NCBI RefSeq assembly: GCF_006345805.1 | Contig: NC_043006.1 | Coordinates: 59,396,001 to 59,460,000 of the forward strand | Direction of reading: 5' to 3' | DNA length: 64,000 bases | From: Octopus sinensis | Taxonomy: Eukaryota | In this document: one piece after another, positions 4,643 to 61,011 of the stretch | Layout of the letters: each line of letters opens with the position of its first letter | Position numbering within the stretch: position 1 is the stretch's first letter | Notes under the pieces: model-generated | Told to the model about the DNA's origin: nothing | Database searches by the model: none | What the model saw: the letters and a program-made list of their open reading frames with translations, nothing else | Program-made: the position numbers and the translations under genes

Positions 4643-5000
4643 GGCGCAGGAGTGGCTGTGTGGTAAATAGCTTGCTTACCACCCACATGGTTCCGGGCTA
4701 AGTCTTCTACTATAGCCTCAGGCCGACCAAAGCCTTGTGAGTGGATTTAGTAGAGGGAAACTGAAAGAAGCCTGTCGTATATATATATGTATATATTTGT
4801 GTGTCTGTGTTTGTTCCCCCACCATCAATTGATAGCCGATGTTGGTGTGTTTACGTCCCCGTAACCTAGCGGTTCAGCAAAAGAGACCGATGGAATAAGT
4901 ACTAGGCTTACAAAGAACAAGTCCTATGGTCGATTTGCTCGACTAAAGGTGGTGCTCCAGTAGGGCTGCAGTCAAATGACTGAAGCAAATAACAGAATAA
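4643..5000 (+). mobile_element. SINE family A (tRNA-derived), empty-site copy. Other copies: about 1387-1720 +, 23865-24150 -, 28375-28615 -, 35285-35385 -, 49140-49590 -, 57835-58285 +, 58460-58670 -, 60537-60985 +
   Basis: A box TGGCTGTGTGG, internal (TA)/(TG) run, tail with CAGTC-AAAT-GACTG hairpin; B box GGTTCAGTCCC is seen in other copies but deleted in this one. Confidence 0.88.
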
Positions 5001-5473
5001 AATACGAGAACAATAAAGAATAGTAGTCTGCATTAGAACGAAAATTAGTTACAGCGTTGGACAAAATACCTTTTCATCAACTTTGGCATTTATCCTTCCG
5101 GGAATGCTTGAATGAAGTACCAGTTAAACACTGGGGTCAATATAATCGATGACAGTCTTTGTTAAAAAAATCACAGTGCAAGTGTGCAAGTGTCTTCAAC
5201 TATAACTTCGGTCCGACAAAAACCTTGTGTATAGATTTGTTACAAAGAAATTGAAAGCTGCCCATTGCATATATATGGGGGGGGGGGCAAAAATTAAGAA
5301 TGACCTGTAGTCAGGAAAATACACATCACAATATCAATAAGATTTACGCTCAGGAAAATACAAGGAACATCTTTACTATTTTCTGCATATGCTCTTCTAT
5401 AGAACGAAAAAAGCGCAGGAGTGGCTGTGTGGATAGGCGCAGGAGTGGCTGTGTGGTAAGTAGCTTGCTAACC

Positions 5474-7582
5474 TTCGTCTGAGTTAGACGTGTATTTTGG
5501 AGCTGCTTCAGATGTCACGTGTTAACGTGAAATATTGAACTTTTGACTCGACTACAGGTAGGCGTTTTGTATTTTTGGGAGTTTAGTGAAGTTTTATTGC
5601 TTGCATTTGATGTTTTTTTAGCATTGAATATTTTTTAGCAGATAATAAAACTCCACTTTGCTCCAGATATAATTTTGCTGCCTGTTGTCGAGTTTAAAGA
5701 GAATTGTATTTTTAAAGCGGCGTAGTCCGTCTGCAAAAATAGTTTTTGAAATTGTCTTTGTGTTATCCACGGGAATTACCAAGGAGTACCAAAGATTATT
5801 TTACCAAGGTGTTTTACCAACTGTGCATTTGGCCTGGAATACAATTTTTTGGCCGAAAAAAAGTGAAAACAAAAAAAGAAAAAATTATTTCCTTTGCCTG
5901 GATTTGAACTCTCTTTCTCCGTCTATCATTTATTCTTAAAAAAGAACTTTTTTTGAACTGCTATTTCTATTTTTATTTCTTCTCTTCTGTTGCATTTTTC
6001 ATTCTCCTTTCTGTGTCTTATTTTATGTTATCACATTTTGAACTGTTTTTTCTTACGTTATGGCAAAGAAATTCACTGTGTGGGAATTGACACCTCCCCA
6101 AAAATATTTGAATGACCTCGAGGACAAAACCGTGGTGTTGAGGACGTATTCAAAGTCGCTCAACACCATAATGGTTTTCCCAAAAGACACTATTGTTGGC
6201 GAGCTGGCAGACTATATGCCAGCCGTTAAATACATTCAACGGGGAGCCAAATACACAACGGTTTGGTTGCTGTTTGACTCCCCAAAAGATGCTTGCGAGT
6301 TTGCAAGCAGGCCCATTGAGGGCAAAGAAATCTTGTTTCTCCCTAGTTACAAGGGAGAAAAATTGACAAGACTGTGGGTCTGCGGCCTGCCACCCGACAT
6401 TGAACCCGAGTGAATAGAACAATCTATCTGCCGGGGTCTGGGTGACAGGGACGCAAAAATCCTAAATGTCAATGTACAGCCTGCGGCTGATTGGGAGGGG
6501 TCTAAGGCAACCTTAACCCTATGGACCCAGTCAACCAAGAGTCTGGTTTTACCGGACTTTTTGAGAATGGCCGGGTCCAAGTATCCGGTGATGCTTGAGG
6601 GACGCCCCCCCCCCCAAGTGTCACCTGTGTTTGGAGACCGGCCACATCAAGAAGAGCTGCCCCAGGGACCAGAGTAGGATCCTGGAGCGGCTGATATTGG
6701 AGCCTCTCCCTGCATCTTCAATGGAGGGAGAGAAGCAAAGTGAGGAGGGGGAAAATCCTCCTCCAAAAGAAAGAGAAAGGCGGGGAGCAATGGCGACCCA
6801 CCAAAGGACCCGAAAGCTGCGGGAGAGGAGAACCCGGTGCGCACAGCTCCGGAACCTCAGCCTCCCGTGGCCCAGGGCCAGAAGAAAAAGAAAAAGAAAA
6901 AGAGAAACGGAGCGTCGCCGGCGGATTGCTACACGCAGACGGCGGTTCCCGAGTATCCCGGGTCCTCTCAGGCGGGTGTGCCACCTGAGGGACTATTCGT
7001 GGAAGATTTTGTGCTCCTCTTTTTCAAAGGAAAAAAGGTGGAAAGCACCGTGAAAAAAGTGAGAAAGAGAGGACATTGGGAGGTAATCCGCTCCTGTGTG
7101 GAAAACCCCGAGTGGCCTTCGCAGTTAGCTGCGGGGGTCGTGGGAAGGGCTGATCTACACAGGATCGTGGCTTCCTGCCCAGCGGACTCCTTCCAGACTA
7201 TACCACTGGACACCGGCCTGACCAGCGAGTATTGCCTCAATGAGGCAAGAGCAATGGTCGGCCGGGTCACTTAGGCGGTGTAACATCTTTGTAACATGTG
7301 GAAGAGGAGGTTCGTTGCCTCCTCTAAAATATGTAATTTGATATCATGTGAACATTTTGTAACATTTTGAAGAGGAGGTTTATTGCCTCCTCTAAAATTT
7401 GTAACTTGTAATCATTGTATTAAATGTAATTATTGAACATTGTTTTAGAGAAGCAAAAGTCGGCGGGCGCTTTCTGACTTCTCCCATCACCATCTTCATC
7501 CACCACCACCATCATCCATTAATGTCTTTGTCCAGCCCGTAGCTACTCTGTGTGCTGCCCTTGTGGCAAATTAAATGAAATA
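5474..7582 (+). mobile_element. ORF1-only non-LTR retroelement copy 1 (HAL1/Tx1-ORF1-like), inserted in the head of SINE family A
   Basis: 16-bp TSD AAGTAGCTTGCTAACC at 5458-5473 and 7583-7598; degraded ORF1 at 6060-7274; A-rich 3' end; no RT/EN. Confidence 0.9.
6060..7274 (+). pseudogene. Gag/ORF1-like protein of copy 1 (CCHC knuckle, basic tract, C-terminal domain)
   Basis: One W->stop at 6411-6413 and frameshifts (polyC about 6604-6615, and about 6800-6840); GRPP-KCHLCLETGHIKKSC. Confidence 0.85.
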
Positions 7583-7733
7583 AAGTAGCTTGCTAACCAA
7601 CCACATGGTTCCGGGTTCAGTCCCACTGCGTGGCATCTTGGGCAAGTGTCTTCTGCTATAGCCCCGGGCCGACCAATGCCTTGTGAGTGGATTTGGTAGA
7701 CGGAAACTGAAAGAAGCCTGTCGTATATATGTA

Positions 7734-7764
<31 letters not shown>

Positions 7765-7965
7765 TTCTGTGTTTGTCCCCCTAGCATTGCTTGACAACCA
7801 ATTCTGGTGTGTTTACGTCCCCATCACTTAGCGGTTCGGCAGAAGAGACCGATAGAATAAGTACTAGGCTTACAAAGAATAAGTCCCGGGGTCGATTTGC
7901 TCGACTAAAGGCGGTGCTCCAGCATGGCCGCAGTCAAATGACTGAAACAAGTAAAAGAGAGTAAA
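7583..7965 (+). mobile_element. 3' part of the SINE-A host of copy 1 (5' part at 5413-5473)
   Basis: Continues exactly where the head stops. Confidence 0.92.
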
Positions 7966-10900
7966 GAGAAAAAAGCAGTTGGAGATTTGAACAAACGTGT
8001 TTCAATTCGACGCTCACCACATGCTGAAATGACCGGAAATAGGACGAGGTTGTTACGGGTGTGAGTGACAAGGAGGACAACTTGAAGGGCGACTTATGAC
8101 GTGGGTGGCAAGGGGGCAACTACGAACGTGGCTTAAGTGTGCGTGTGTATTTGTGTGTGAGTACGCGCATTTTGTGTATTTGTGTGTGAGTGCATGTGTA
8201 TGAATGTGATTGTGTGAGTGAGTTCATATTTTCTTCGTCTACATATATGTTCGTTCGCCGATTATAAACAATGCTTTCGCTAATGGTATCAGTTGTTTCC
8301 TGGTCTCCGCGTAAAAATGTCCAGGCTGTTAGTTGTTCGATAGACTAGGAGATTAATACCTCACTTGGAAATCGATGGGGCCTGGACGATAAGAAGGGCA
8401 TCTGTACGTGGGGAACCCTGTCCCAACATACTTTCTTCTGAACCATGCAAGCATAAAGACGTCAACGTCAAAAGGGCTATGTCGACGACGACGGCGATGA
8501 TAATGATGATGGTTTTATAAGACAGGGCCAACGTACAGAAATAGAAGTAAGTTGAGTACAAGTCACCGATATTAGCAAGGGAATACTGAAGGACAGGGAT
8601 GCTGAATAACGTTTGTCTAAAAATATTCATTAAGTATATCAGAACATACTTTCTGTTGCTGTTACAACTGCTGCACCAAATACAATTTTCAGAATGCATA
8701 CCGTTATGTAACATGGGCTTTGTTGGATATTATTATTGGTTTTAAAAATAATAAATAAATGCGCCCTTTTAAATCCTAGCCATGCTCATGGGACCGGTTT
8801 CCCGGTTTCAATGACGTATGTGTTCCCCAGCTGGACGGGACGCCAGTCCATCGCAGCGTTACTCATTTTTGCCAGCTGCGTGGACTGGAGCAACGTGAAA
8901 TGAAGTGTTTTGCTCAAGAACACAACGCGTCGCCCGGTCCAGGAATCGAAACCACAATCTTACGATCATGATGTTGACACCCTAACTACTAAGCTACGCG
9001 CTTCCACATTATTGGTATTAGTTAACGTTTATTCAAATTACGACTATGATGCGTATATTACATTATTTATAAGGCTTATAGTTCATAACTTTCGCGCGCC
9101 CTTCGATATCAGTTTGATTGATCGGGTTTATTTTCAACTAATGGAAAAATCGAAGGCAATAAAAGACACTTTAGCAGGAAAACTATAAATACTGTAACGA
9201 GTAGGTTAAGAAAATTCAGATTTGAAATAATTTCTTTCGTGATCATGTGGTCGGCAAGCAAGATAGAGAAAAACAAAGAGAAGACAAAGAGAGAAAGATG
9301 GAGATGGGAATACATGGAAGAGGACTTTGTGAAAAGTTTTAGTTGAGGAGAAAGGGGAACACGAAGACATACACAATCATGCATACATAGATACATAGAT
9401 ACATACATACATGAGTACATACATGCGTACATACATACATACATACATACATACATACATACATACATACATACATACATACATGCATACATACATACAT
9501 ACATACATACATACATACAACCGTTCAAGAATTTGGACCTGGAGATTTCCATTTCCAGCGACTTCGAGGGCCACCTCCCAGTGGTGTCGAGCGTCAACGA
9601 AGAACCCTCGACTACAACAAGACGACCAAAGTGTTTTTTCTCCAAGGTCTGGGGTCTCCCGCCCCTAAGCCCTAGATCATCACCTAATCACCCTTACCCG
9701 TCTTGTTGCTTAACAACAACAACTACATACATACATACCCCGTTGTTGATGTTGAAATTCCAAAGGAGGAGTCTTAGACCTAGGTTAGAAACCGGTTCTT
9801 TCTCTATTGGCAAGAAATCTTGAAATAAACTGAATAATGACATACATAGATACATACAGACATATGATTTATTGTATACTAACAAACTATTCATTATTGG
9901 TAGGAGACCTTCCGTTCATTTACAGATGGTCTACTGTATATTGGATAAATGGTGGATTGTATGTAGATAGATCACATACTGTAAATTTACCGTTGAGTTA
10001 CGCAATACTGACCAATCAAATGTGTAAGTTGTATATCAACTAGTTCATTGAGAACTGTATATACTGATAGGTGACCTTCAGAAAAATTATACAAAGTCAA
10101 ATTCCAATATTTTGAAGATTCTAAAAAATAATTGATTTGCATGGAAAAATAAAATTGTATGGGACTGAGCATGAGGTGGCAATTAAACGGGCTAATAAAT
10201 ATGTAGTGAAATGTGTAGGCATCCGTCTTTATGTTCTGAGTTCAAATTACGCTGAGGTCGACTTTTTCCTTTAATCCTTTTAGGGTCGATAAAATAAATA
10301 CCAATTGAACATCAGTCGATGTAGTCGACTTACCCACCGAAATTGCTGGCCTTGTGCTAAAATTTGAAACCAATATGTCCTGAAATGTTGATTAGTGAAA
10401 ATAAAGAGTAAAAGAGAAATGGTAAAGTTCGAAAAGTATTCTAAGAAAAGTCATGAAAATAATAATGTGTTTTTAGGAGAAAAACCATAGCAAATTTATA
10501 AGTGATGTTACTGACTTGAAATTTAAAATAACCTCTCGCTACAGACTACAGAAATCATTTTATCTAAATTGCTGAAACCTTGTTAGTACCATAGACACCG
10601 ATATACACTCACACAAAAGAAGGCAGCGAGCTGGCAGAAACGTTAGCACGGCGGGCGAAATGCGCAGCCGTATTTCGTCAGTCGTTACGTTCCGAGTTCA
10701 AATTCCGCCGAGGTCGACTTTTCCTTTCATCCTTTCGGGGTCGATAAATTAAGTACCAGTTACGCACTGGGGTCGATCTAATCGACTTAATCCCTTTGTC
10801 TGTCCTTGTTTGGTCCCTCTGTGTTTAGCCTCTTGTGGTTAGTAAAGAAATATATACACAAACACACACGATATATGAGATATTATCTTAGTATGTTTCC

Positions 10901-12369
10901 ACCTACCGTTTGCATCATGCGAAGAGCAGTGGCACAAGAGAAAGAGAGGATAAGAGTGATAGGGAATACTCCAAAGTAAAAAGGAAGAGAAGTTAAAGAG
11001 AGCATTGTGGTAAATGATGGCGGTGAGTGTAATTACATTGCTCGACGACAATTACTTGCACTAAGGCGCATGCGTTAAATCATTCAGTATTTTTTTTTTT
11101 TTTTTAATTTCAGTTAAAAATATTTTGTCAAGTGTGAAGTTGTAAAAACAGAAATCTTGAAACTATTCTGAATTTGGAACGTGGTCTTTCTTTTATTAAA
11201 TTAATGTAGAATTCCTTTATTTTATGGTTTAAAATTCTTTTCGAACCTACTGTATTCACTATGCACTCCATTTATATTCTACTTCGTTTACAAAATATTG
11301 ATTTACCAACATCTGTCACTTTGTATTATTATTTTCCAGCAGCAAAGTTCATTTACTTAATACAGCGTTCTTTTGTTACTAATAAATATTCTATTTTGTT
11401 TATCCTCCTATAACCACTGTAACTATCTCAGCATTTTATTCATTATTTGTTTTATTTCTTCTAGAATCTATACGCATTTAAATAGTAATATATCACAAAT
11501 CGTGTTGATATTTTTTTTTACGAAAGCGGTGAAAGCTAAACTACACACATATTTCCAAATCTCTTGTCTTTTGCGTTTTCTTTTCAACCATAGTTCTGTT
11601 TGTTTGCTTGTATAATTTCGATTACTATTCTACACCCAATATTTCTGTGACAACTATAGCCCTGCGATACGACAAGTTTGGTCGACTAATCTATGATAAA
11701 GGGTATTTTGTCATGACCATCTCATTTTATTTTTCGAGTACATTTTCCTATATATCTTCCTGCTCTTTTAAGATGGCAGGACGTCATCTGAGGAAGATTT
11801 GGCTGCTATTTCTAACAGGCCAAGTTACCATATACAGGCTTTCTCGATTTCCGACAGTGTAATGTTATTTATTCCTATCGAAATTTCCAGCAAATGATTA
11901 AATTTTCTAACTACTAAGAATAACTTACTCCTTTCAGTTCTTCTAACTGATGGTATTTTGATTTAATAAAGCTTTCTGATTCCTCCCATATTTGGACCAT
12001 CACTTCAAGTTTTCAAATTCATTTATATTCTAACAACTCTCTGCACGATTAGATTACATATTCTTCCTAATCTCCATCTAATAAAACAAAATAAAATATA
12101 CCTTATAATCACCAAACAGAGCATACTGTATACATACACCACCCAATCAAATAACACATTGCTTTATGTAAACAATACCTATAACATCATTAAATCACAG
12201 GAGAAACTTTTCTATAGAATTGCCGCTCAATAATATAACACAACTCACAAAAGTCATACATGACGTATTCAACCAAAATAACCACTCGAGAATGAACACT
12301 CCTCATGCCATAGATACGAAAACAACAACTGTCCCTACAAAAGGAGTTAATTCACATTAAACACATTGC

Positions 12370-12750
12370 TCTTTTACTTGTTCCAGTCATTTGACTGTGG
12401 CCATGCTGGAGCACCGCCTTTAATTGAGGAAATCCACCCCCAGGACTTATTCTTTGTAAGCCTAGTACTTATTCTATCGGTCTCTTTTGCCGAACCACTA
12501 AGTTACGGCGGCGTAAACACACCAGCATCGGTTGTCAAGCGATGTTGGGGGAACAAACACAGACACTCAAAGATACACACACACACATACATATATATAT
12601 ACATATATACGACGGGCTTTTTTCAGTTTCCGTCAACCAAAATCCACTCACAAGGCTTTAGTCGGCCCGAGGCTATAGTAGAAGACACTTGCTCAAGATG
12701 CCACGCAGTAGGACTGAACCCGGAACCATGTGGTTGGTAAGAAGCTACTT
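12370..12750 (-). mobile_element. 3' part of the SINE-A host of copy 2 (5' part at 14825-14861)
   Basis: Continues exactly where the head stops. Confidence 0.92.
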
Positions 12751-14824
12751 TATTTCAAAACATTTGCCATAAAGGCAGTACACAGATTAAGTTAGCTTTG
12801 CGGGCTGGACGAGGACATTAATGAAGTGAATGATAATGAAAGACAGATGATAAGGATGGGAGAAGACAAAAAGCGCCCGCCGACTTTCGCTTCTCTAAAA
12901 CATTGTTCTTTTTAAAGATAAACACAAAACGAGGTATTAAACCTCTTCAATTTTTCCAATTTTTGGACTTAGCAGTCCATTATTAATAAAAATGCAAAAC
13001 GAGGTATTAAACCTCTTCAATTTTTCCAATTTTTGGACTTAGCAGTCCATTATTAATACTAACAGTTCAATAATTACATATCGTCCTCGAAATAGCTTGT
13101 GCCCGCGCCCTCCACCATCATACACGCCTCCCTCAGAACGTAATCAAGTTCTGAGTTCGCGTCGCCCGGGACCAAGCTATAATCTTCATTGAGCTCCTTT
13201 AGCCCAAGCGTCACGTCGAACGCCACGGCCTCCACAGCTATCTGCGGAGGCCATTCGGGGTCCTGTGTGAAGGCTAAAGGAGCTCCCTTGTGGTACTCTT
13301 CCATCATTTTTTTTTCAATTTCTCCCCCTCTATAGAAGAGGACCAATACGTTCAGTTCTTTCGTTGGCGGCACAGTTCCCGCCAACGTCTGCGGCTCATG
13401 GATATCAGCCGCCCGACCTTTCTTTCTTTTTCTCCTCCTTCTTTTGGAGGAGACTGCTGACCCAGGGGACTCCATCACCAGACACGGGGGATCGCTATCC
13501 CCCTCCGCCACCTGAGCGTTCTTTGGCGAGCAGCCATTGTTGCTCGCCTGTCTCTTTCTTTTCGTGGAGGCAACCTCCTCCACGTCTTCCACCGTCTCCC
13601 CTCCAATGAGGGGGCGGCGGGCGCCTTTTCCCCTTCATGCTCCGGGGCACCACCACGGCCCCCGGGACAATTCCTCTTGATATGTCCGGGCTTCAGGCAC
13701 AGGTGACACTTGGGGGGCGTCCCCCGAGTATCACCGGGTACCTGTGCCCAGCCATTCTCAGGAAGTCCGGGAATTTCATTTCTCCCACGGCCACCGGTGT
13801 CCACAGGGTCAAAGTTGCCTTTGACCCCTCCCAGGCGACCGCGGGAGCCATTTTCACACTCAGTAGCCTGGGTCCGCTATCCCCCAGGCCTCGCCGGATG
13901 GTCTTCTCGATCCATTCCGCCTCCGTGCCCGGGGGCAGCCCACAAACCCAGGCTCTTTTTACTTTTCTCCCACAATACGAGGGGAGGAACAAAATTTCCT
14001 CTCCCTCCAGTGGCTCGCTAGCAAATCTGCTAGCTTCCTCGGGGGTACCAAACAGCAACCACACCGTTGCAAATTTACTCCCCCGAGAAATAAACTTTAT
14101 CGTTGGTAGGTGGTCCCCCAACTCTTTCTCTATGGTGCTCCTGTCGAAGAGGGCGATAGCTCACGCGACCTAGAATAGGTTCGTAGGACCACCGTCCTCT
14201 TCTCAAGACTTTCAATCCACTGCTTGGGTGGGACAACCTCCCATTCCAAAGCAGTGGTTTCTTTTGTTGCCATGATTTTGAAAAAAAGTTCAACTAAAAG
14301 TTCAAAGTCCAATAAGAAAAAAACACAATGACAGAACAGAAAGACAGAACAGAGAAAAGGACGAAGGAAGACAGTTCAAATAATGGCAACACAGTTCTGC
14401 AACTGGTAATCCTCACGAAACAGGGTACTCCTAGTTGCAGCACACTTGGTTCTCCGTGGTAAATCCAAGCACAATTGGTTCTCCGTGGTAAATCCAAGCA
14501 CAATTGGTTCTCCGTGGTAAATCCAAGCGAACAAATTAATTTTTGAGGAGGGGCTATGCCTCTTCAAAATACACAATTCTCACTAAAAGGTGAGACAATA
14601 AATACGCCAACAGGCAGAACAAATACATCCGAAGCAAGTGAAGCTTATTACGCACAGAAAAGTGTTAACACTAATTAACATTAATGCCAAAAAGTATTAA
14701 CGGCAAGCAATAAACCTCACTATGCTTCCAAAAATATCCAAAATGTCCTACCTGTTGCCGTAAAATGTTCAATAATTCACGTTAACACGTGACATTTGCC
14801 GGAGCAAAAAACAGCACGTCTGTC
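12751..14824 (-). mobile_element. ORF1-only non-LTR retroelement copy 2 (diverged subfamily), same SINE-A site
   Basis: 16-bp TSD (plus strand TGGTAAGAAGCTACTT) at 12735-12750 and 14825-14840; 5' and 3' ends homologous to copy 1; 29-bp tandem repeats in the 5' UTR (about 14445-14530). Confidence 0.9.
13074..14273 (-). pseudogene. Gag/ORF1-like protein of copy 2
   Basis: About 3 frameshifts; RYPVILGGRPP-KCHLCLKPGHIKRNC; aligns by eye end to end with copy 1. Confidence 0.85.
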
Positions 14825-15923
14825 TGGTAAGAAGCTACTTACCACACAGCCACTCCTGCGCGTATTCTTTACAAAAAAACAACAAAACAAAAAAAAAACA
14901 GATGAAACACTAAAGTCACGCCGAGAACAAATCAAATCATGCCACAAAGCAAACCTTGTGGAGTATACCAAAACAATTCTACATCATCAACTCGCCGTAT
15001 TCACACGGGTCGCATTCAGTCACCCACCTTGTAAACTTTTACTGGAGAAAAGCACTAACCTCACCCTATTCTCCAAATGAAAAACTTGAAAATGTCAACG
15101 CAAGCTTGGCTAATGTAGAAAATATCTGTTTTGAGCACTTTCTGTTGTATCCATCATACAACCAATTTCGCCATAGCTACTAGAGCAAAGAAAACTGCCT
15201 GCCCTCCCCAGTCATAGCTAGGCGGTAGGACGATCTGCACTCGGCTGAAAGTCGAATCAGTGCTGCACGCGTCACTAGTTGTTCAACAAAAATCGACATG
15301 ACAGTGATGTTCGGATGCTAGGGGGCCTAATTTTTTTTCTATTTGCTTAACCCAGGGCTACAGTTTTATTAAATGGATGAGCTGTTGAAGAATGTACATG
15401 ATAGGAGGCTTTCACTTCCAGGAATCTTCTAGGAATCTTTTATTTTCTAGGCCTGTGAATATGTATTCAAATCAACAGCTTTTCGTAATTGAGTCCTACA
15501 TGCAGAGCATTTTAACAACAGATAGATCTTCTGACCAGTGGGATGCGTCCTTCTGCAAGAAGAAGAGCAGATGCTACTTAAATGAAAACTAGAACAAGCC
15601 CAAGGACATCTCTCCACCTAAAATGAATTTACCAGGATAGCTTCCTCTTATTCCATTTCTGGTCGAGTCTTGTTCGTTATCATGAACTGGAGGTCTAGAC
15701 TGAAGCATAGACCAAGCAATTTCACCAGTTTGTCGGTTCCACAATGTTATACCGTGTTATACACTTTCCTCTCCAGGTGTTCAGCTGCAAATCCATTCAC
15801 TTGTTTGGGTTAATCTTTGCTCTTGCCAACGCCTCGCAGTTCTTTAGAATATTGTCCACCATGATTAGTAGTCTGACTCCAGCATAGTGAATCAGTCTCC
15901 ACGAATCTCCCGGACCCCAGTTC

Positions 15924-17065: not shown

Positions 17066-56552
<39,487 letters not shown>

Positions 56553-57810: not shown

Positions 57811-58006
57811 GGTTTCAAAATCTGTTCTCAAACGAGGCGTAGGAGTGGCTGTGTGGTAAGTAGCTTGCTTACCAACCACATAGTTCCAGATTTAGTCCCA
57901 CTGCGTGGCACGTTGGACAAGTGTCTTCTACTATAGCCTCGGACCGACCAAAGCCTTGTGAGTGGATTTGGTAGACGAAAACTGAAAGAAGCCCGTCATA
58001 TATATA

Positions 58007-58084
<78 letters not shown>

Positions 58085-58762
58085 TGTGTCGATGTTTGTT
58101 CCCCCACCATCGCTCGGCAACCGACGCTAGTGTGTTTACGTCCCCGTATCTTAGCGGTTCGGCGAAAGAGACCGATAGAATAAGTACTAGGCTTACAAAG
58201 AATAAGCCCTTGGGTCGATTTGCTCGACTAAAAGGCGGTGCTCCAGCATTGCCACAGTCAAATGTCTGAAACAAGTAAAAGAGTAAGTGGTTAGAAGAGA
58301 AGGACATGTTGTGTTTGGTGGAATGTCGAGTGGGTATTGCACTATGAGCTTGTCCCAGGTGGACATACTATGGACGTTAACCTTTAGATTCAACAAGTGC
58401 AGTGAGTATATAGACATTGAAAACCCGCTGGCCTGTTAATATATATATTCTTTTCTTTTATTCTTTTACTTGTTTCAGCCATTTGACTGCGATCATGCTT
58501 GAGCACTGCTTTTAGTCGAACAAATCGACCCCAGGACTTATTCTTTTTAAGTATAAGTACTTATTCTATCGGTATATTTTACCGAACCGGTAGGTTACAG
58601 GGACATAAACATACCAGCATCGGTTGTCAAGCGATGTTGGGGTACAAACACAGCAGACACACAAGTATATGCATATATCACCGTCATCACCGTGACTGAC
58701 CAGGCTATCAGATGTTGCTACACGTCGCTGGTCACAATGCGTTTCGCATATATATATGCATA

Positions 58763-60456: not shown

Positions 60457-60704
60457 GGAATGGCAAGTTTTGGCTATGAAATAAAACTGAAATATGGAAA
60501 AGTATCAGGGTATGTAGATTTTAACACTTATGGCTCATGAGTGGCTGTGTGGTAAGTAGTTTGCTTACCAACCACAAGGTTCCGGGTTCAGTCCCACTGC
60601 GTGGCACTTTGGGCAAGTGTCTTCTACTATAGCCTCAGGCCGACCAAAGCCTTGTGAGTGGATTTCGTAGACGGAAACTGAAAGAAGCCCGTCATATATA
60701 AGTG

Positions 60705-60736
<32 letters not shown>

Positions 60737-60744
60737 GTGTGTGT

Positions 60745-60782
<38 letters not shown>

Positions 60783-61011
60783 TTTGTCCGTGTTTGTCCT
60801 CCCAACATCGCTTGACAACCGATGTTGGTGTATTTACGTCCCCGTAACCTAGCGGTTCGGCAAAAGACACCGATAGAATAAGTACTAGGCTTACAAAGAA
60901 TAAGTCCTGGGGTCGATTTGATCGACTAAAGGCGGTGCTCCAGCATGGCCACGGTCAAATGACTGAAAGAAGTAGAAGAAAGAAAAGAAAAAGAATATAC
61001 GTATATATATA

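What the first reader, a model, noticed from the sequence alone, without database searches (positions are those of the whole stretch)
5413..14861. Site-specific retroelement family that targets one position in a tRNA-derived SINE head
Seen: two ~2.1-kb elements (5474-7582 +, 12751-14824 -) each split a SINE-A copy at the same site. Both 3' ends read TGAAATA joined to AAGTAGC (target ...GTGTGGT^AAGTAGCTT...), with 16-bp TSDs. Each TSD pair carries its host copy's own variant (GCTTGCTAACC vs GCTTCTTACC; other copies read GCTTGCTTACC), so these look like independent insertions. The ORF1 proteins are only roughly half identical by eye while the host SINEs stay close to consensus, which argues against one ancient composite being amplified. 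Copies at about 4670, 57855 and 60550 show the empty site. Known: Tx1-clade L1-like elements are often target-specific (U2 snRNA, tRNA arrays, 5S, other transposons). Inference: this lineage uses an abundant Pol III SINE (D-arm/anticodon-equivalent region) as a renewable safe-harbour target.
Basis: partly seen in the sequence, partly recalled or inferred. Interest (0 to 1): 0.92.

Follow-up and report, generated by a model that had tools for sequence, protein, structure and literature searches.

The report
Retroelement that targets an octopus SINE
Two 2.1-kb retroelements in this octopus window, and a third copy in another octopus species, each sit at exactly the same base of a very common short repeat (SINE), so this is a site-specific "parasite of a parasite". 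It is a new target for a known kind of targeted LINE, not a new mechanism.

Summary
e1 (5474-7582, +) and e2 (12751-14824, -) each split a SINE-A copy at GTGTGGT^AAGTAGC. Both lie in the SINE's orientation and have perfect 16-bp and 15/16-bp target-site duplications that carry each host copy's private variant. Four other SINE-A heads in the window show the empty site. A third copy, found only by protein homology in Octopus sinensis, has the same 5' junction.

The three copies are deeply diverged: synonymous sites are saturated and dN/dS is 0.09-0.2 in the N-terminal region. They are therefore independent insertions by old sub-lineages, not one amplified composite.

The roughly 400-aa ORF models as two RRM-like domains in tandem and carries a CCHC knuckle. 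It is a 24-29% identical relative of the ORF1 of octopod LINEs whose ORF2 has APE, RT and zf-RVT domains (L1/Tx1 type). e1 and e2 share that clade's 3' tail (..CCCTTGTGGCnAAT..GAAATA) and 16-bp duplication. Relatives sit inside (ATT)n and (TCTA)n microsatellites.

e1 and e2 have no endonuclease or RT. They are ORF1-only "half-LINEs", presumably moved in trans by an autonomous partner that was not found.

Limits: three copies only, no genome-wide census, and no Repbase/Dfam check. Verdict: a new member, with a new target, of a known kind; interest is moderate.

The parts
5437..5473 (+). 5' part of host SINE-A copy 1 (head up to the insertion site). It includes the left target-site duplication AAGTAGCTTGCTAACC at 5458-5473.
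5474..7582 (+). Element e1, 2109 bp. 5' UTR 5474-6059, with a conserved 5' block at 5486-5638. Decayed ORF 6060-7274, with an in-frame TGA at 6411-6413, a frameshift in a run of C at about 6605-6615, and a second frameshift at about 6745. 3' UTR 7275-7582, with two 66-bp hairpin units at 7282-7347 and 7351-7415 and a conserved tail at 7435-7582 that ends ...CCCTTGTGGCAAATTAAATGAAATA.
7583..7957 (+). 3' part of host SINE-A copy 1. It begins with the right target-site duplication at 7583-7598. The B-box-like GGTTCCGGGTTCAGTCC follows.
12368..12750 (-). 3' part of host SINE-A copy 2. It begins (minus strand) with the right target-site duplication AAGTAGCTTCTTACC at 12750-12736.
12751..14824 (-). 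Element e2, 2074 bp (2075 if the ambiguous A at 14825 is counted). 5' UTR 14824-14274, with a conserved block at 14821-14671. Decayed ORF 14273-13074, with three single-base frameshifts and no premature stop. 3' UTR 13073-12751, with two identical 64-bp hairpin units at 13058-12995 and 12988-12925 and a conserved tail at 12908-12751 that ends ...CCTTTATGGCAAATGTTTTGAAATA.
14826..14861 (-). 5' part of host SINE-A copy 2. It includes the left target-site duplication at 14840-14826.
4644..4938 (+). SINE-A copy with the empty target site (GTGTGGTAAATAGCTTGCTTACCACC).
49402..49589 (-). SINE-A copy with the empty target site.
57837..58223 (+). SINE-A copy with the empty target site (GTGTGGTAAGTAGCTTGCTTACCAACC).
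60533..60920 (+). SINE-A copy with the empty target site. It was used to test the head against Rfam.
26955..27470 (+). 5'-truncated LINE of the same clade: the C-terminus of its ORF2 is 42% identical to the L003 ORF2, and its tail reads ..CAGCCCTGCGTGGCCAATAAAGAAAT. It is flanked on both sides by (TCTA)n, so it is a microsatellite-specific relative.

Best explanation
e1, e2 and the O. sinensis copy belong to one family of non-LTR retrotransposons from an octopod L1/Tx1-type LINE clade. The family integrates by target-primed reverse transcription at a single position in the head of SINE-A.

Shown:
- The element's 3' end (...GAAATA) always joins AAGTAGC. This places the first nick on the bottom strand at 5'-..GCTACTT^ACCACAC..-3'.
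- The 5' end always follows ..CTTACC. This places the second nick on the top strand 16 nt downstream (CTTACC^AACC) and gives the 16-bp duplication.
- Both nicks fall within or at the edge of a perfect hairpin-forming palindrome, GGTAAG-N7-CTTACC.
- The element encodes only an ORF1-type protein with two RRM-like domains, a CCHC knuckle, a basic stretch and a C-terminal part of about 110 aa with no known relatives. It has no endonuclease or reverse transcriptase.

Inferred:
- The element is moved in trans by an autonomous relative. That relative's AP-type endonuclease supplies the SINE-A specificity, and its RT recognises the shared 3' tail (..CTGTGT..CCCTTGTGGCnAAT..GAAATA).
- Landing in a hugely abundant, dispensable SINE makes insertion harmless to the host. 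It separates the A-box-like and B-box-like motifs by 2.1 kb, which would disable that SINE copy if they act as a Pol III promoter. The supply of targets is renewed for as long as the SINE keeps amplifying.
- The ORF1-only layout is older than the split between e1 and e2.
For: Same-site, same-orientation junctions with duplications in two full copies. A third 5' junction in a copy found blind in another species.

Host-private variants appear in both halves of each duplication. The elements are 67-77% identical against 88% for the host SINEs.

In the N-terminal 200 codons, third-position differences are 0.45-0.59 against 0.16-0.29 at positions 1 and 2. dN/dS is 0.09-0.2 with saturated dS. The three copies therefore come from long-separated lineages whose protein stayed functional and that still use the same site.

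The ORF is an ORF1:
- a weak zf-CCHC match;
- 93 relatives, the named ones being cephalopod proteins;
- in L002, L003 and L005 these relatives are followed by an ORF2, and the L003 ORF2 has Exo_endo_phos, RVT_1 and zf-RVT domains;
- an AlphaFold model at pLDDT 80 matches tandem-RRM proteins: SFPQ/NONO, hnRNP A1 UP1 and IMP3 RRM12.

The 3' tail is shared by e1, e2, three autonomous LINEs, a truncated LINE in the window and SINE-B. The Argonauta LINE has a 16-bp duplication. Clade members sit inside (ATT)n and (TCTA)n.

e1 and e2 contain no ORF2 remnant. A second, unrelated ORF1-only family of the same clade exists at two O. vulgaris loci (L004, L015). ORF1-only forms therefore do propagate in this clade.

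Tx1-clade LINEs are known to target other transposons, microsatellites and small-RNA genes through their endonuclease (PMC4494074, PMC8869645).
Against: Only three copies were reachable, and one of them lacks its 3' half. No genome-wide census was possible, so strict specificity cannot be told apart from a strong preference.

No autonomous element with this target was found. No annotated protein is closer than 29% identity to this ORF1, apart from the O. sinensis copy.

Both window copies have broken ORFs, so nothing shows current activity.

Membership of the Tx1 clade proper, as opposed to L1, cannot be tested without an RT.

Selection on ORF1 could have acted in autonomous ancestors rather than in the ORF1-only form.
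Confidence: 0.72

Rival explanations
1. The family is an ordinary autonomous site-specific LINE. On this view the 2.1-kb copies are sporadic dead products, such as internal deletions or spliced RNAs that lost ORF2, and not a propagating ORF1-only lineage.
For: Both copies have broken ORFs. The purifying selection seen between lineages could have acted in autonomous masters. Relatives in L002, L003 and L005 are autonomous, at 5.3-5.5 kb.
Against: e1 and e2 are saturated at synonymous sites, yet they share exactly the same layout: ORF1 stop, then hairpin units, then a conserved 150-nt tail, with no ORF2 remnant. One old deletion is more parsimonious than two identical ones. A second ORF1-only family exists in the same clade at two loci.
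Confidence: 0.17
2. One ancient SINE-plus-insert composite was copied, by segmental duplication or by retrotransposition of the whole unit. On this view only one insertion ever happened.
For: Both copies lie within 9 kb of each other in the window.
Against: Each duplication pair carries a different private variant, present in both halves. The inserts are 67-77% identical while the SINE parts are 88% identical. The two copies are in opposite orientation. A third copy lies in a different chromosomal context in another species. The insert contains many runs of T that would stop Pol III transcription of a composite (the role of T runs is established knowledge).
Confidence: 0.02
3. Insertion is not truly site-specific. 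The partner endonuclease has a loose preference, for example for the hairpin-forming palindrome or a short motif. SINE-A is hit often only because it is so abundant.
For: SINE-A occurs about once per 5 kb in the window. SINE-B, which carries the same 3' tail, sits at an AT-rich non-SINE site. The Argonauta LINE sits at a unique-looking site.
Against: All three events share the same nucleotide on both strands and the same orientation. BLAST finds no e-type copy elsewhere in the window or in about 100 kb of other octopod loci.
Confidence: 0.06
4. The element itself contributes to targeting. The C-terminal ORF1 domain, which has no known relatives, or the element's RNA would guide a non-specific partner enzyme to SINE-A.
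For: The C-terminal half has no homologue among 5.8 billion proteins. The lineage has kept its target through deep divergence although it encodes no endonuclease.
Against: No case of this is known for APE-type LINEs, where the endonuclease sets the target (PMC4494074, PMC8869645). The C-terminal part evolves fast, at 29% identity and dN/dS 0.3-0.4. No clear complementarity is visible between the RNA 3' end and the target.
Confidence: 0.03

Closest known systems
Tx1-clade target-specific LINEs: Tx1L in the piggyBac element Tx1D of Xenopus, Tx1-Mar in Mariner-N4_AMi of crocodilians, and Kibi, Koshi and Keno in microsatellites and U2 snRNA genes (PMC4494074)
   Same: An APE-type LINE clade with a zf-RVT tail in ORF2. 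Insertion is at one defined sequence of another repeat, in a fixed orientation and with a duplication. Sister lineages use microsatellites. The 3' end is specific rather than poly(A)-dependent.
   Different: The target here is the head of a SINE, a target type I did not find reported in the papers I could search. The copies seen lack ORF2. Clade membership by RT phylogeny could not be tested.
HAL1, the 'half-L1' ORF1-only L1 derivatives of mammals (Bao and Jurka 2010, cited in PMC4494074)
   Same: A non-autonomous LINE derivative that keeps the 5' UTR, ORF1 and 3' UTR, lacks ORF2, and shows signs of selection on ORF1.
   Different: To my knowledge HAL1 inserts without site specificity and uses a poly(A) tail. 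Here the element is site-specific and uses a specific 3' tail.
Elements that target tRNA genes: Dictyostelium TRE5-A and DGLT-A and yeast Ty3 insert next to tRNA genes; Dada DNA transposons insert inside tRNA or snRNA genes (PMC3706591, PMC8869645)
   Same: They use an abundant Pol III-type template as a safe landing site. Dada inserts inside the RNA-coding sequence at a fixed position.
   Different: Those elements use real tRNA genes. To my knowledge, the retroelements among them depend on the Pol III machinery and insert at a distance outside the gene. Dada is a DNA transposon. Here the target is a retroposed SINE copy, and the position lies inside it.
R1, R2 and other rDNA-specific LINEs
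   Same: Single-site specificity kept over long evolutionary time, with a multicopy target as a refuge.
   Different: Different clades and enzymes. Their target is a host gene array kept uniform by concerted evolution. Here the target is a dispersed and decaying repeat family.

Membership tests
Target-specific non-LTR retrotransposon (as a behaviour) | Independent copies inserted at the same nucleotide of the same target sequence, in the same orientation, with target-site duplications | tested here: met
   Two complete copies plus one 5' junction from another species. Private variants in the duplications show the events are independent. Only three copies.
Target-specific non-LTR retrotransposon (as a behaviour) | The great majority of genomic copies lie at that site | not testable with these tools
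   No octopus genome could be searched by DNA. The JGI metagenome scans found no octopus DNA. The window and about 100 kb of other octopod loci hold no off-target copy.
Tx1 clade (L1 superfamily) LINE | RT sequence groups with Tx1 in a phylogeny | not testable with these tools
   The element has no RT. No labelled Tx1 or L1 reference set was available. Published octopus annotations list 'L1-Tx1' families (PMC13282606, PMC8967140).
Tx1 clade (L1 superfamily) LINE | ORF2 with an AP-endonuclease, an RT and a C-terminal zinc-binding motif | tested here: not met
   Absent from e1 and e2. The full set is present in the related autonomous LINE of L003 (Exo_endo_phos 1.9e-15, RVT_1 8.2e-31, zf-RVT 5.4e-9). 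The L002 and L005 LINEs carry an ORF2 homologous to it.
Tx1 clade (L1 superfamily) LINE | ORF1 with RRM domain(s) followed by a CCHC zinc knuckle | tested here: met
   zf-CCHC match below the Pfam cut-off (E 0.004-0.04). Conserved C-x2-C-x4-H-x4-C motif. The AlphaFold model at pLDDT 80 matches tandem-RRM proteins at E about 1e-4.
Octopod LINE clade defined here by its 3' tail | 3' end ..CTGTGT..CCCTTGTGGCnAAT(A)AAGAAAT(A) without poly(A), and a duplication of about 16 bp | tested here: met
   Alignment A6 of ten 3' ends. 16-bp duplication in the L005 LINE and in e1 and e2.
HAL1-like ORF1-only non-autonomous LINE | Full-length copies keep the 5' UTR, ORF1 and 3' UTR and lack ORF2 | tested here: met
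   e1 and e2 share both termini and the ORF and have no ORF2 remnant.
HAL1-like ORF1-only non-autonomous LINE | The ORF1-only form itself has propagated, giving many copies, with ORF1 under selection in that form | tested here: inconclusive
   dN/dS is 0.09-0.2 between lineages, and two saturated lineages share the same layout. However, there are only two full copies, and selection could have acted in autonomous ancestors.
tRNA-derived SINE (the target) | The head is recognisable as a tRNA, with internal A and B boxes | tested here: inconclusive
   A-box-like TGGCTGTGTGGT and B-box-like GGTTCCGGGTTCAGTCC are present. ARAGORN and the Rfam tRNA model find nothing, even at E<=10.

The most novel reading that the evidence does not exclude
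A long-lived ORF1-only half-LINE has kept single-nucleotide specificity for a SINE head through saturating divergence while encoding no endonuclease. On the most novel reading, part of the targeting information lies in the element itself, in its C-terminal ORF1 domain (which has no known relatives) or in its RNA, rather than in a dedicated partner endonuclease. That would be a new way for an APE-type retroelement to choose its site.
Probability: 0.05. Interest if true: 0.8.

Novelty: new member of a known kind. Interest (0 to 1): 0.42.

Why it matters
Target-specific LINEs are natural examples of precise RNA-templated DNA insertion, and their endonucleases are of interest for targeted integration. 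A lineage that uses a dispersed SINE as its landing site would add a new class of target: a retroposon that feeds on another retroposon, with targets that are continuously renewed.

It would also give a second, independent example of an ORF1-only "half-LINE", this time with site specificity.

For octopus genomics, it would explain part of the nested SINE/LINE structure and supply a clean insertion marker. It does not change our understanding of how these elements work.

Tried and rejected
- AlphaFold on the three-sequence alignment gave pLDDT 31 and was discarded. The 67-sequence alignment worked.
- Pfam on the ORF gave only a sub-threshold zf-CCHC match and a spurious low-complexity PNM8A match.
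- A search with the C-terminal half of the ORF found nothing.
- The ORF2 search returned unnamed hits. The two loci I fetched from it (L013, L014, ENA ERZ21867824) have no SINE-A and no clade tail, so they come from another organism and say nothing about the partner.
- Two JGI metagenome scans, one for the 3' junction and one for the SINE-A head, found nothing.
- Exact look-ups of P0002 and of a window ORF were not on record.
- The Logan contigs L006-L012 carry distant ORF1 homologues but are too short and too foreign to show element ends.
- Near-matches to the junction motif at 18336, 18811 and 19583 lie inside other SINEs and are unrelated.
- I looked for complementarity between the RNA 3' end and the nicked target and saw none worth reporting.
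- The whole 150-nt 3' tails do not fold better than shuffles (z = +0.25 and +0.51). Only the duplicated hairpin units do (z = -5.7 and -3.4).
- I considered a template-switch chimera of the U6/L1 type. I rejected it because the downstream flank is the continuation of the same SINE, with a duplication.

Full report
**What is in the sequence**

The window is AT-rich (38% GC) animal DNA packed with SINEs. Its closest protein matches are from Octopus.

Element e1 occupies 5474-7582 on the plus strand. Element e2 occupies 12751-14824 on the minus strand. Each interrupts a copy of one SINE family, called SINE-A here. SINE-A is about 430 bp long, starts (ATAG)GCGCAGGAGTGGCTGTGTGGTAAGTAGCTTGCTTACCAACCACATGGTTCCGGGTTCAGTCC..., and has an internal (TA)n(TG)n stretch.

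In both cases the upstream flank ends ...GTGTGGT followed by AAGTAGCTT..ACC. The element ends ...TGAAATA, and the same AAGTAGCTT..ACC follows again before the SINE continues with AACCACATGG. The duplications are perfect:
- 16/16 for e1 (5458-5473 and 7583-7598);
- 15/15 for e2 (14840-14826 and 12750-12736), or 16 if an ambiguous A is counted.

Both elements lie in the SINE's orientation. Uninterrupted SINE-A heads starting at 4644, 49589 (minus), 57837 and 60533 show the empty site. BLAST of e1 and e2 against the window finds no further copy. The junction 16-mer occurs exactly twice, and the near-matches are pieces of other SINEs.

**Independent events or one copied unit?**

Host 1 reads GCTTGCTAACC in both halves of its duplication. 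Host 2 reads GCTTCTTACC in both halves. The uninterrupted copies starting at 4644, 49589 and 57837 read GCTTGCTTACC; the one at 60533 reads GTTTGCTTACC. If one composite had been copied, each private change would have had to arise twice, in parallel.

The two elements are only 67% identical over 578 bp of the ORF and 76-77% over about 155 bp at either end. The host SINE bodies are 88% identical over 323 bp. A unit copied as a whole would show equal divergence throughout. The inserts are also full of T runs that would stop Pol III. The composite model is rejected.

**A third, blind confirmation**

A search with the conceptual N-terminal protein of e2 found a single protein, Octopus sinensis LOC115225585 (281 aa, 64% identity, E 7e-86). 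I fetched its locus, L001, on chromosome CM016886.1.

There the homologous element begins immediately after ...GGCTGTGTGGTAAGTAGCTTGCTTCC. This is the same position of a SINE-A head, in the same orientation. Its 3' part is lost at about L001:10975, so only the 5' junction can be read. The copy was retrieved without any reference to its flanks.

**How old and how constrained?**

Frameshift-corrected codon alignments of the three ORFs give these results for the N-terminal 200 codons:
- third-position differences of 0.45-0.59, against 0.16-0.29 at positions 1 and 2;
- dN/dS of 0.09-0.2, with saturated synonymous sites.

The remainder of the ORF evolves faster (dN/dS 0.3-0.4; 29% identity between e1 and e2).

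The three copies therefore descend from lineages that separated long ago. Each kept a functional protein and the same insertion site.

The copies in the window are themselves dead. e1 has an in-frame TGA and two frameshifts, one of them in a run of 11 C. e2 has three single-base frameshifts. The perfect duplications argue that these insertions are not very old. With 0 differences in 31 compared positions, the upper bound is roughly 9% divergence between the two halves.

**What the ORF is**

Pfam gives only a sub-threshold zinc knuckle; the motif CHLCLxxGHIKxxC is conserved.

A profile search of 1.8 billion representative proteins found 93 relatives, 13 of them at E<=1e-10. The named ones are from O. 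bimaculoides, O. vulgaris, O. sinensis and Argonauta hians. All are 29% identical or less to this ORF.

With 67 of them as an alignment, AlphaFold gives a confident model (mean pLDDT 80, above 90 over most of residues 10-140). Foldseek matches it to tandem-RRM proteins (SFPQ/NONO, hnRNP A1 UP1, IMP3 RRM12) at E about 1e-4.

The protein therefore has two RRM-like domains, a CCHC knuckle, a basic stretch and a C-terminal part of about 110 aa. That C-terminal part has no detectable relative among 5.8 billion proteins. RRM plus CCHC is the ORF1 layout described for L1/Tx1-type LINEs (my own knowledge: Khazina and Weichenrieder 2009).

**The relatives are LINEs, and several are target-specific**

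In L003 (O. vulgaris) the ORF1 homologue is followed by an intact 1132-aa ORF2 with Exo_endo_phos, RVT_1 and zf-RVT domains. The 5.28-kb unit is repeated head to tail.

In L002 (O. sinensis) a decayed ORF1+ORF2 element is flanked on both sides by (ATT)n.

In L005 (Argonauta) a full-length element has a 16-bp duplication, TCTTCAACTTATGTTT.

In the window itself, 26955-27470 is a 5'-truncated member. Its ORF2 C-terminus is 42% identical to L003, and it is flanked on both sides by (TCTA)n.

All of these end with the same tail..CTGTGT..(A)GCCCTTGTGGCnAATAAAGAAAT(A), without poly(A). So do e1, e2 and a second SINE, SINE-B.

e1 and e2 thus share four features with this clade: ORF1 homology, the tail, the duplication length and, more weakly, a GACGTG-containing 5' end.

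Published octopus repeat annotations list 'L1-Tx1' LINE families (PMC13282606, PMC8967140). Tx1-clade LINEs are known for choosing microsatellites, small-RNA genes and other transposons as targets through their endonuclease (PMC4494074, PMC8869645).

**What e1 and e2 lack**

e1 and e2 have no endonuclease or reverse transcriptase and no ORF2 remnant. After the ORF1 stop come two copies of a 64-66-bp hairpin unit, which fold far better than shuffled sequence (z = -5.7 and -3.4). Then comes the conserved tail of about 150 nt, which includes the stem GAGAAGCaAAAG...CTTTcTGaCTTCTC.

Both elements have this same layout despite saturating divergence. The loss of ORF2 therefore most likely predates their split.

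ORF1-only elements are not unique to this lineage. L004 and L015 (O. vulgaris) carry two diverged copies of another element of 1.7-1.8 kb. It has ORF1 and the clade tail but no ORF2 within 6-10 kb, and the L004 copy has an 11-bp duplication.

**Mechanism**

The junctions give the following directly:
- a first nick on the bottom strand at 5'-GCTACTT^ACCACAC-3';
- priming of reverse transcription at the ...GAAAUA end of the RNA;
- a second nick on the top strand 16 nt downstream, at CTTACC^AACC.

Both nicks fall within or at the edge of a perfect 6-bp-stem palindrome, GGTAAG-TAGCTTG-CTTACC, in the SINE head.

By inference, a still unidentified autonomous clade member supplies the endonuclease that recognises this site and the RT that recognises the tail. 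The ORF1 protein probably acts in cis on the element's RNA.

Insertion separates the A-box-like and B-box-like motifs by 2.1 kb. If they act as a Pol III promoter, this would silence that SINE copy.

**Limits**

- Only three copies could be reached.
- No octopus genome could be searched at the DNA level. The metagenome collection holds no octopus DNA.
- Repbase and Dfam could not be consulted. In the papers I could search I found no report of a LINE that targets a SINE head, and nothing on site specificity in octopus LINEs. Absence from this library is weak evidence.
- The tRNA origin of the SINE head is not confirmed.
- Tx1 membership in the strict phylogenetic sense is untested.

**Verdict**

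This is a site-specific retroelement lineage of an L1/Tx1-type octopod LINE clade. Its target is one position in an abundant SINE, and its known copies are ORF1-only and non-autonomous.

It extends the known list of targets and pairs site specificity with a half-LINE layout, but it works like known Tx1-type elements.

Noticed in passing
window 26955-27470 (+): A 5'-truncated LINE of the same clade, inserted in a (TCTA)n microsatellite, with the repeat on both sides. It appears to be a microsatellite-specific relative. A second RT fragment at 20661-21387 (-) also ends next to (TCTA)n, but with a different 3' end.
   Followed up: partly
window 48110-48790 (-): One SINE-B copy (GGGCGGCGAGCTGGCAGAATCG...) is followed by three head-truncated SINE-B units of about 184 bp and a final short fragment, in tandem. 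Each starts at GGTATTTCG directly after the previous unit's ...AAAGAAATA end. This could be repeated insertion at the element's own 3' end or a tandem amplification.
   Followed up: no
window 30808-31014 (+): A clean SINE-B copy with a duplication of about 20 bp (GATATAATATAAATTAATATA). Its 3' tail is the same CCCTTGTGGG.AATAAAG motif as the LINE clade, so SINE-B is probably mobilised by that clade.
   Followed up: partly
window 5413-5436 (+): Directly upstream of host SINE-A copy 1, the first 20 nt of the SINE head (GCGCAGGAGTGGCTGTGTGG) are repeated, followed by ATAG and then the full head. The origin is unexplained. It could be a SINE-in-SINE insertion or a 5' duplication.
   Followed up: no
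L003:781-19168 (O. vulgaris OX597840.1): A head-to-tail tandem array of a 5.28-kb LINE. At least three ORF1 copies are present, and one ORF2 is fully intact (1132 aa, 6058-9456). This looks like a potentially active element arranged as an array.
   Followed up: partly
L002:9778-15351 (O. sinensis CM016872.1): A decayed ORF1+ORF2 LINE flanked on both sides by (ATT)n. It is an APE-type element using the kind of target usually associated with Dong/R4 elements.
   Followed up: partly
L004:9917-11653 and L015:~5900-7716 (O. vulgaris): A second, unrelated ORF1-only element family of 1.7-1.8 kb. It has the clade's 3' tail, no ORF2 nearby, and an 11-bp duplication (TGCTGGGTTCG) in L004.
   Followed up: partly
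window 6605-6615 and 13706-13711: Both e1 and e2 have a frameshift in the same run of C just before the CCHC codons (11 C in e1, 6 C in e2). This is a mutational or sequencing hot spot, not a shared lesion.
   Followed up: no
window 18240-18560 and 19400-19690: A third SINE family with a much more tRNA-like head (GGCGCATGGCTCAGTGGTTAGAGCG...GGTTGTAAGTTCGAATCCCGG), present in both orientations.
   Followed up: no
window 39613-40008 (-), 53177-53833 (+), 15687-15868 (-): Other transposon protein remnants: a possibly hAT-transposase-like ORF (judged by eye, not searched), the C-terminal part of an unrelated LINE ORF2, and a short RT fragment just upstream of e2's host SINE.
   Followed up: no
L006-L012 (Logan, SRR118693xx): The same contig of about 1.7 kb, encoding a distant ORF1 homologue (P0007), was assembled in six sequencing runs. 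This suggests an abundant sequence, possibly a transcript, in an unidentified species.
   Followed up: no
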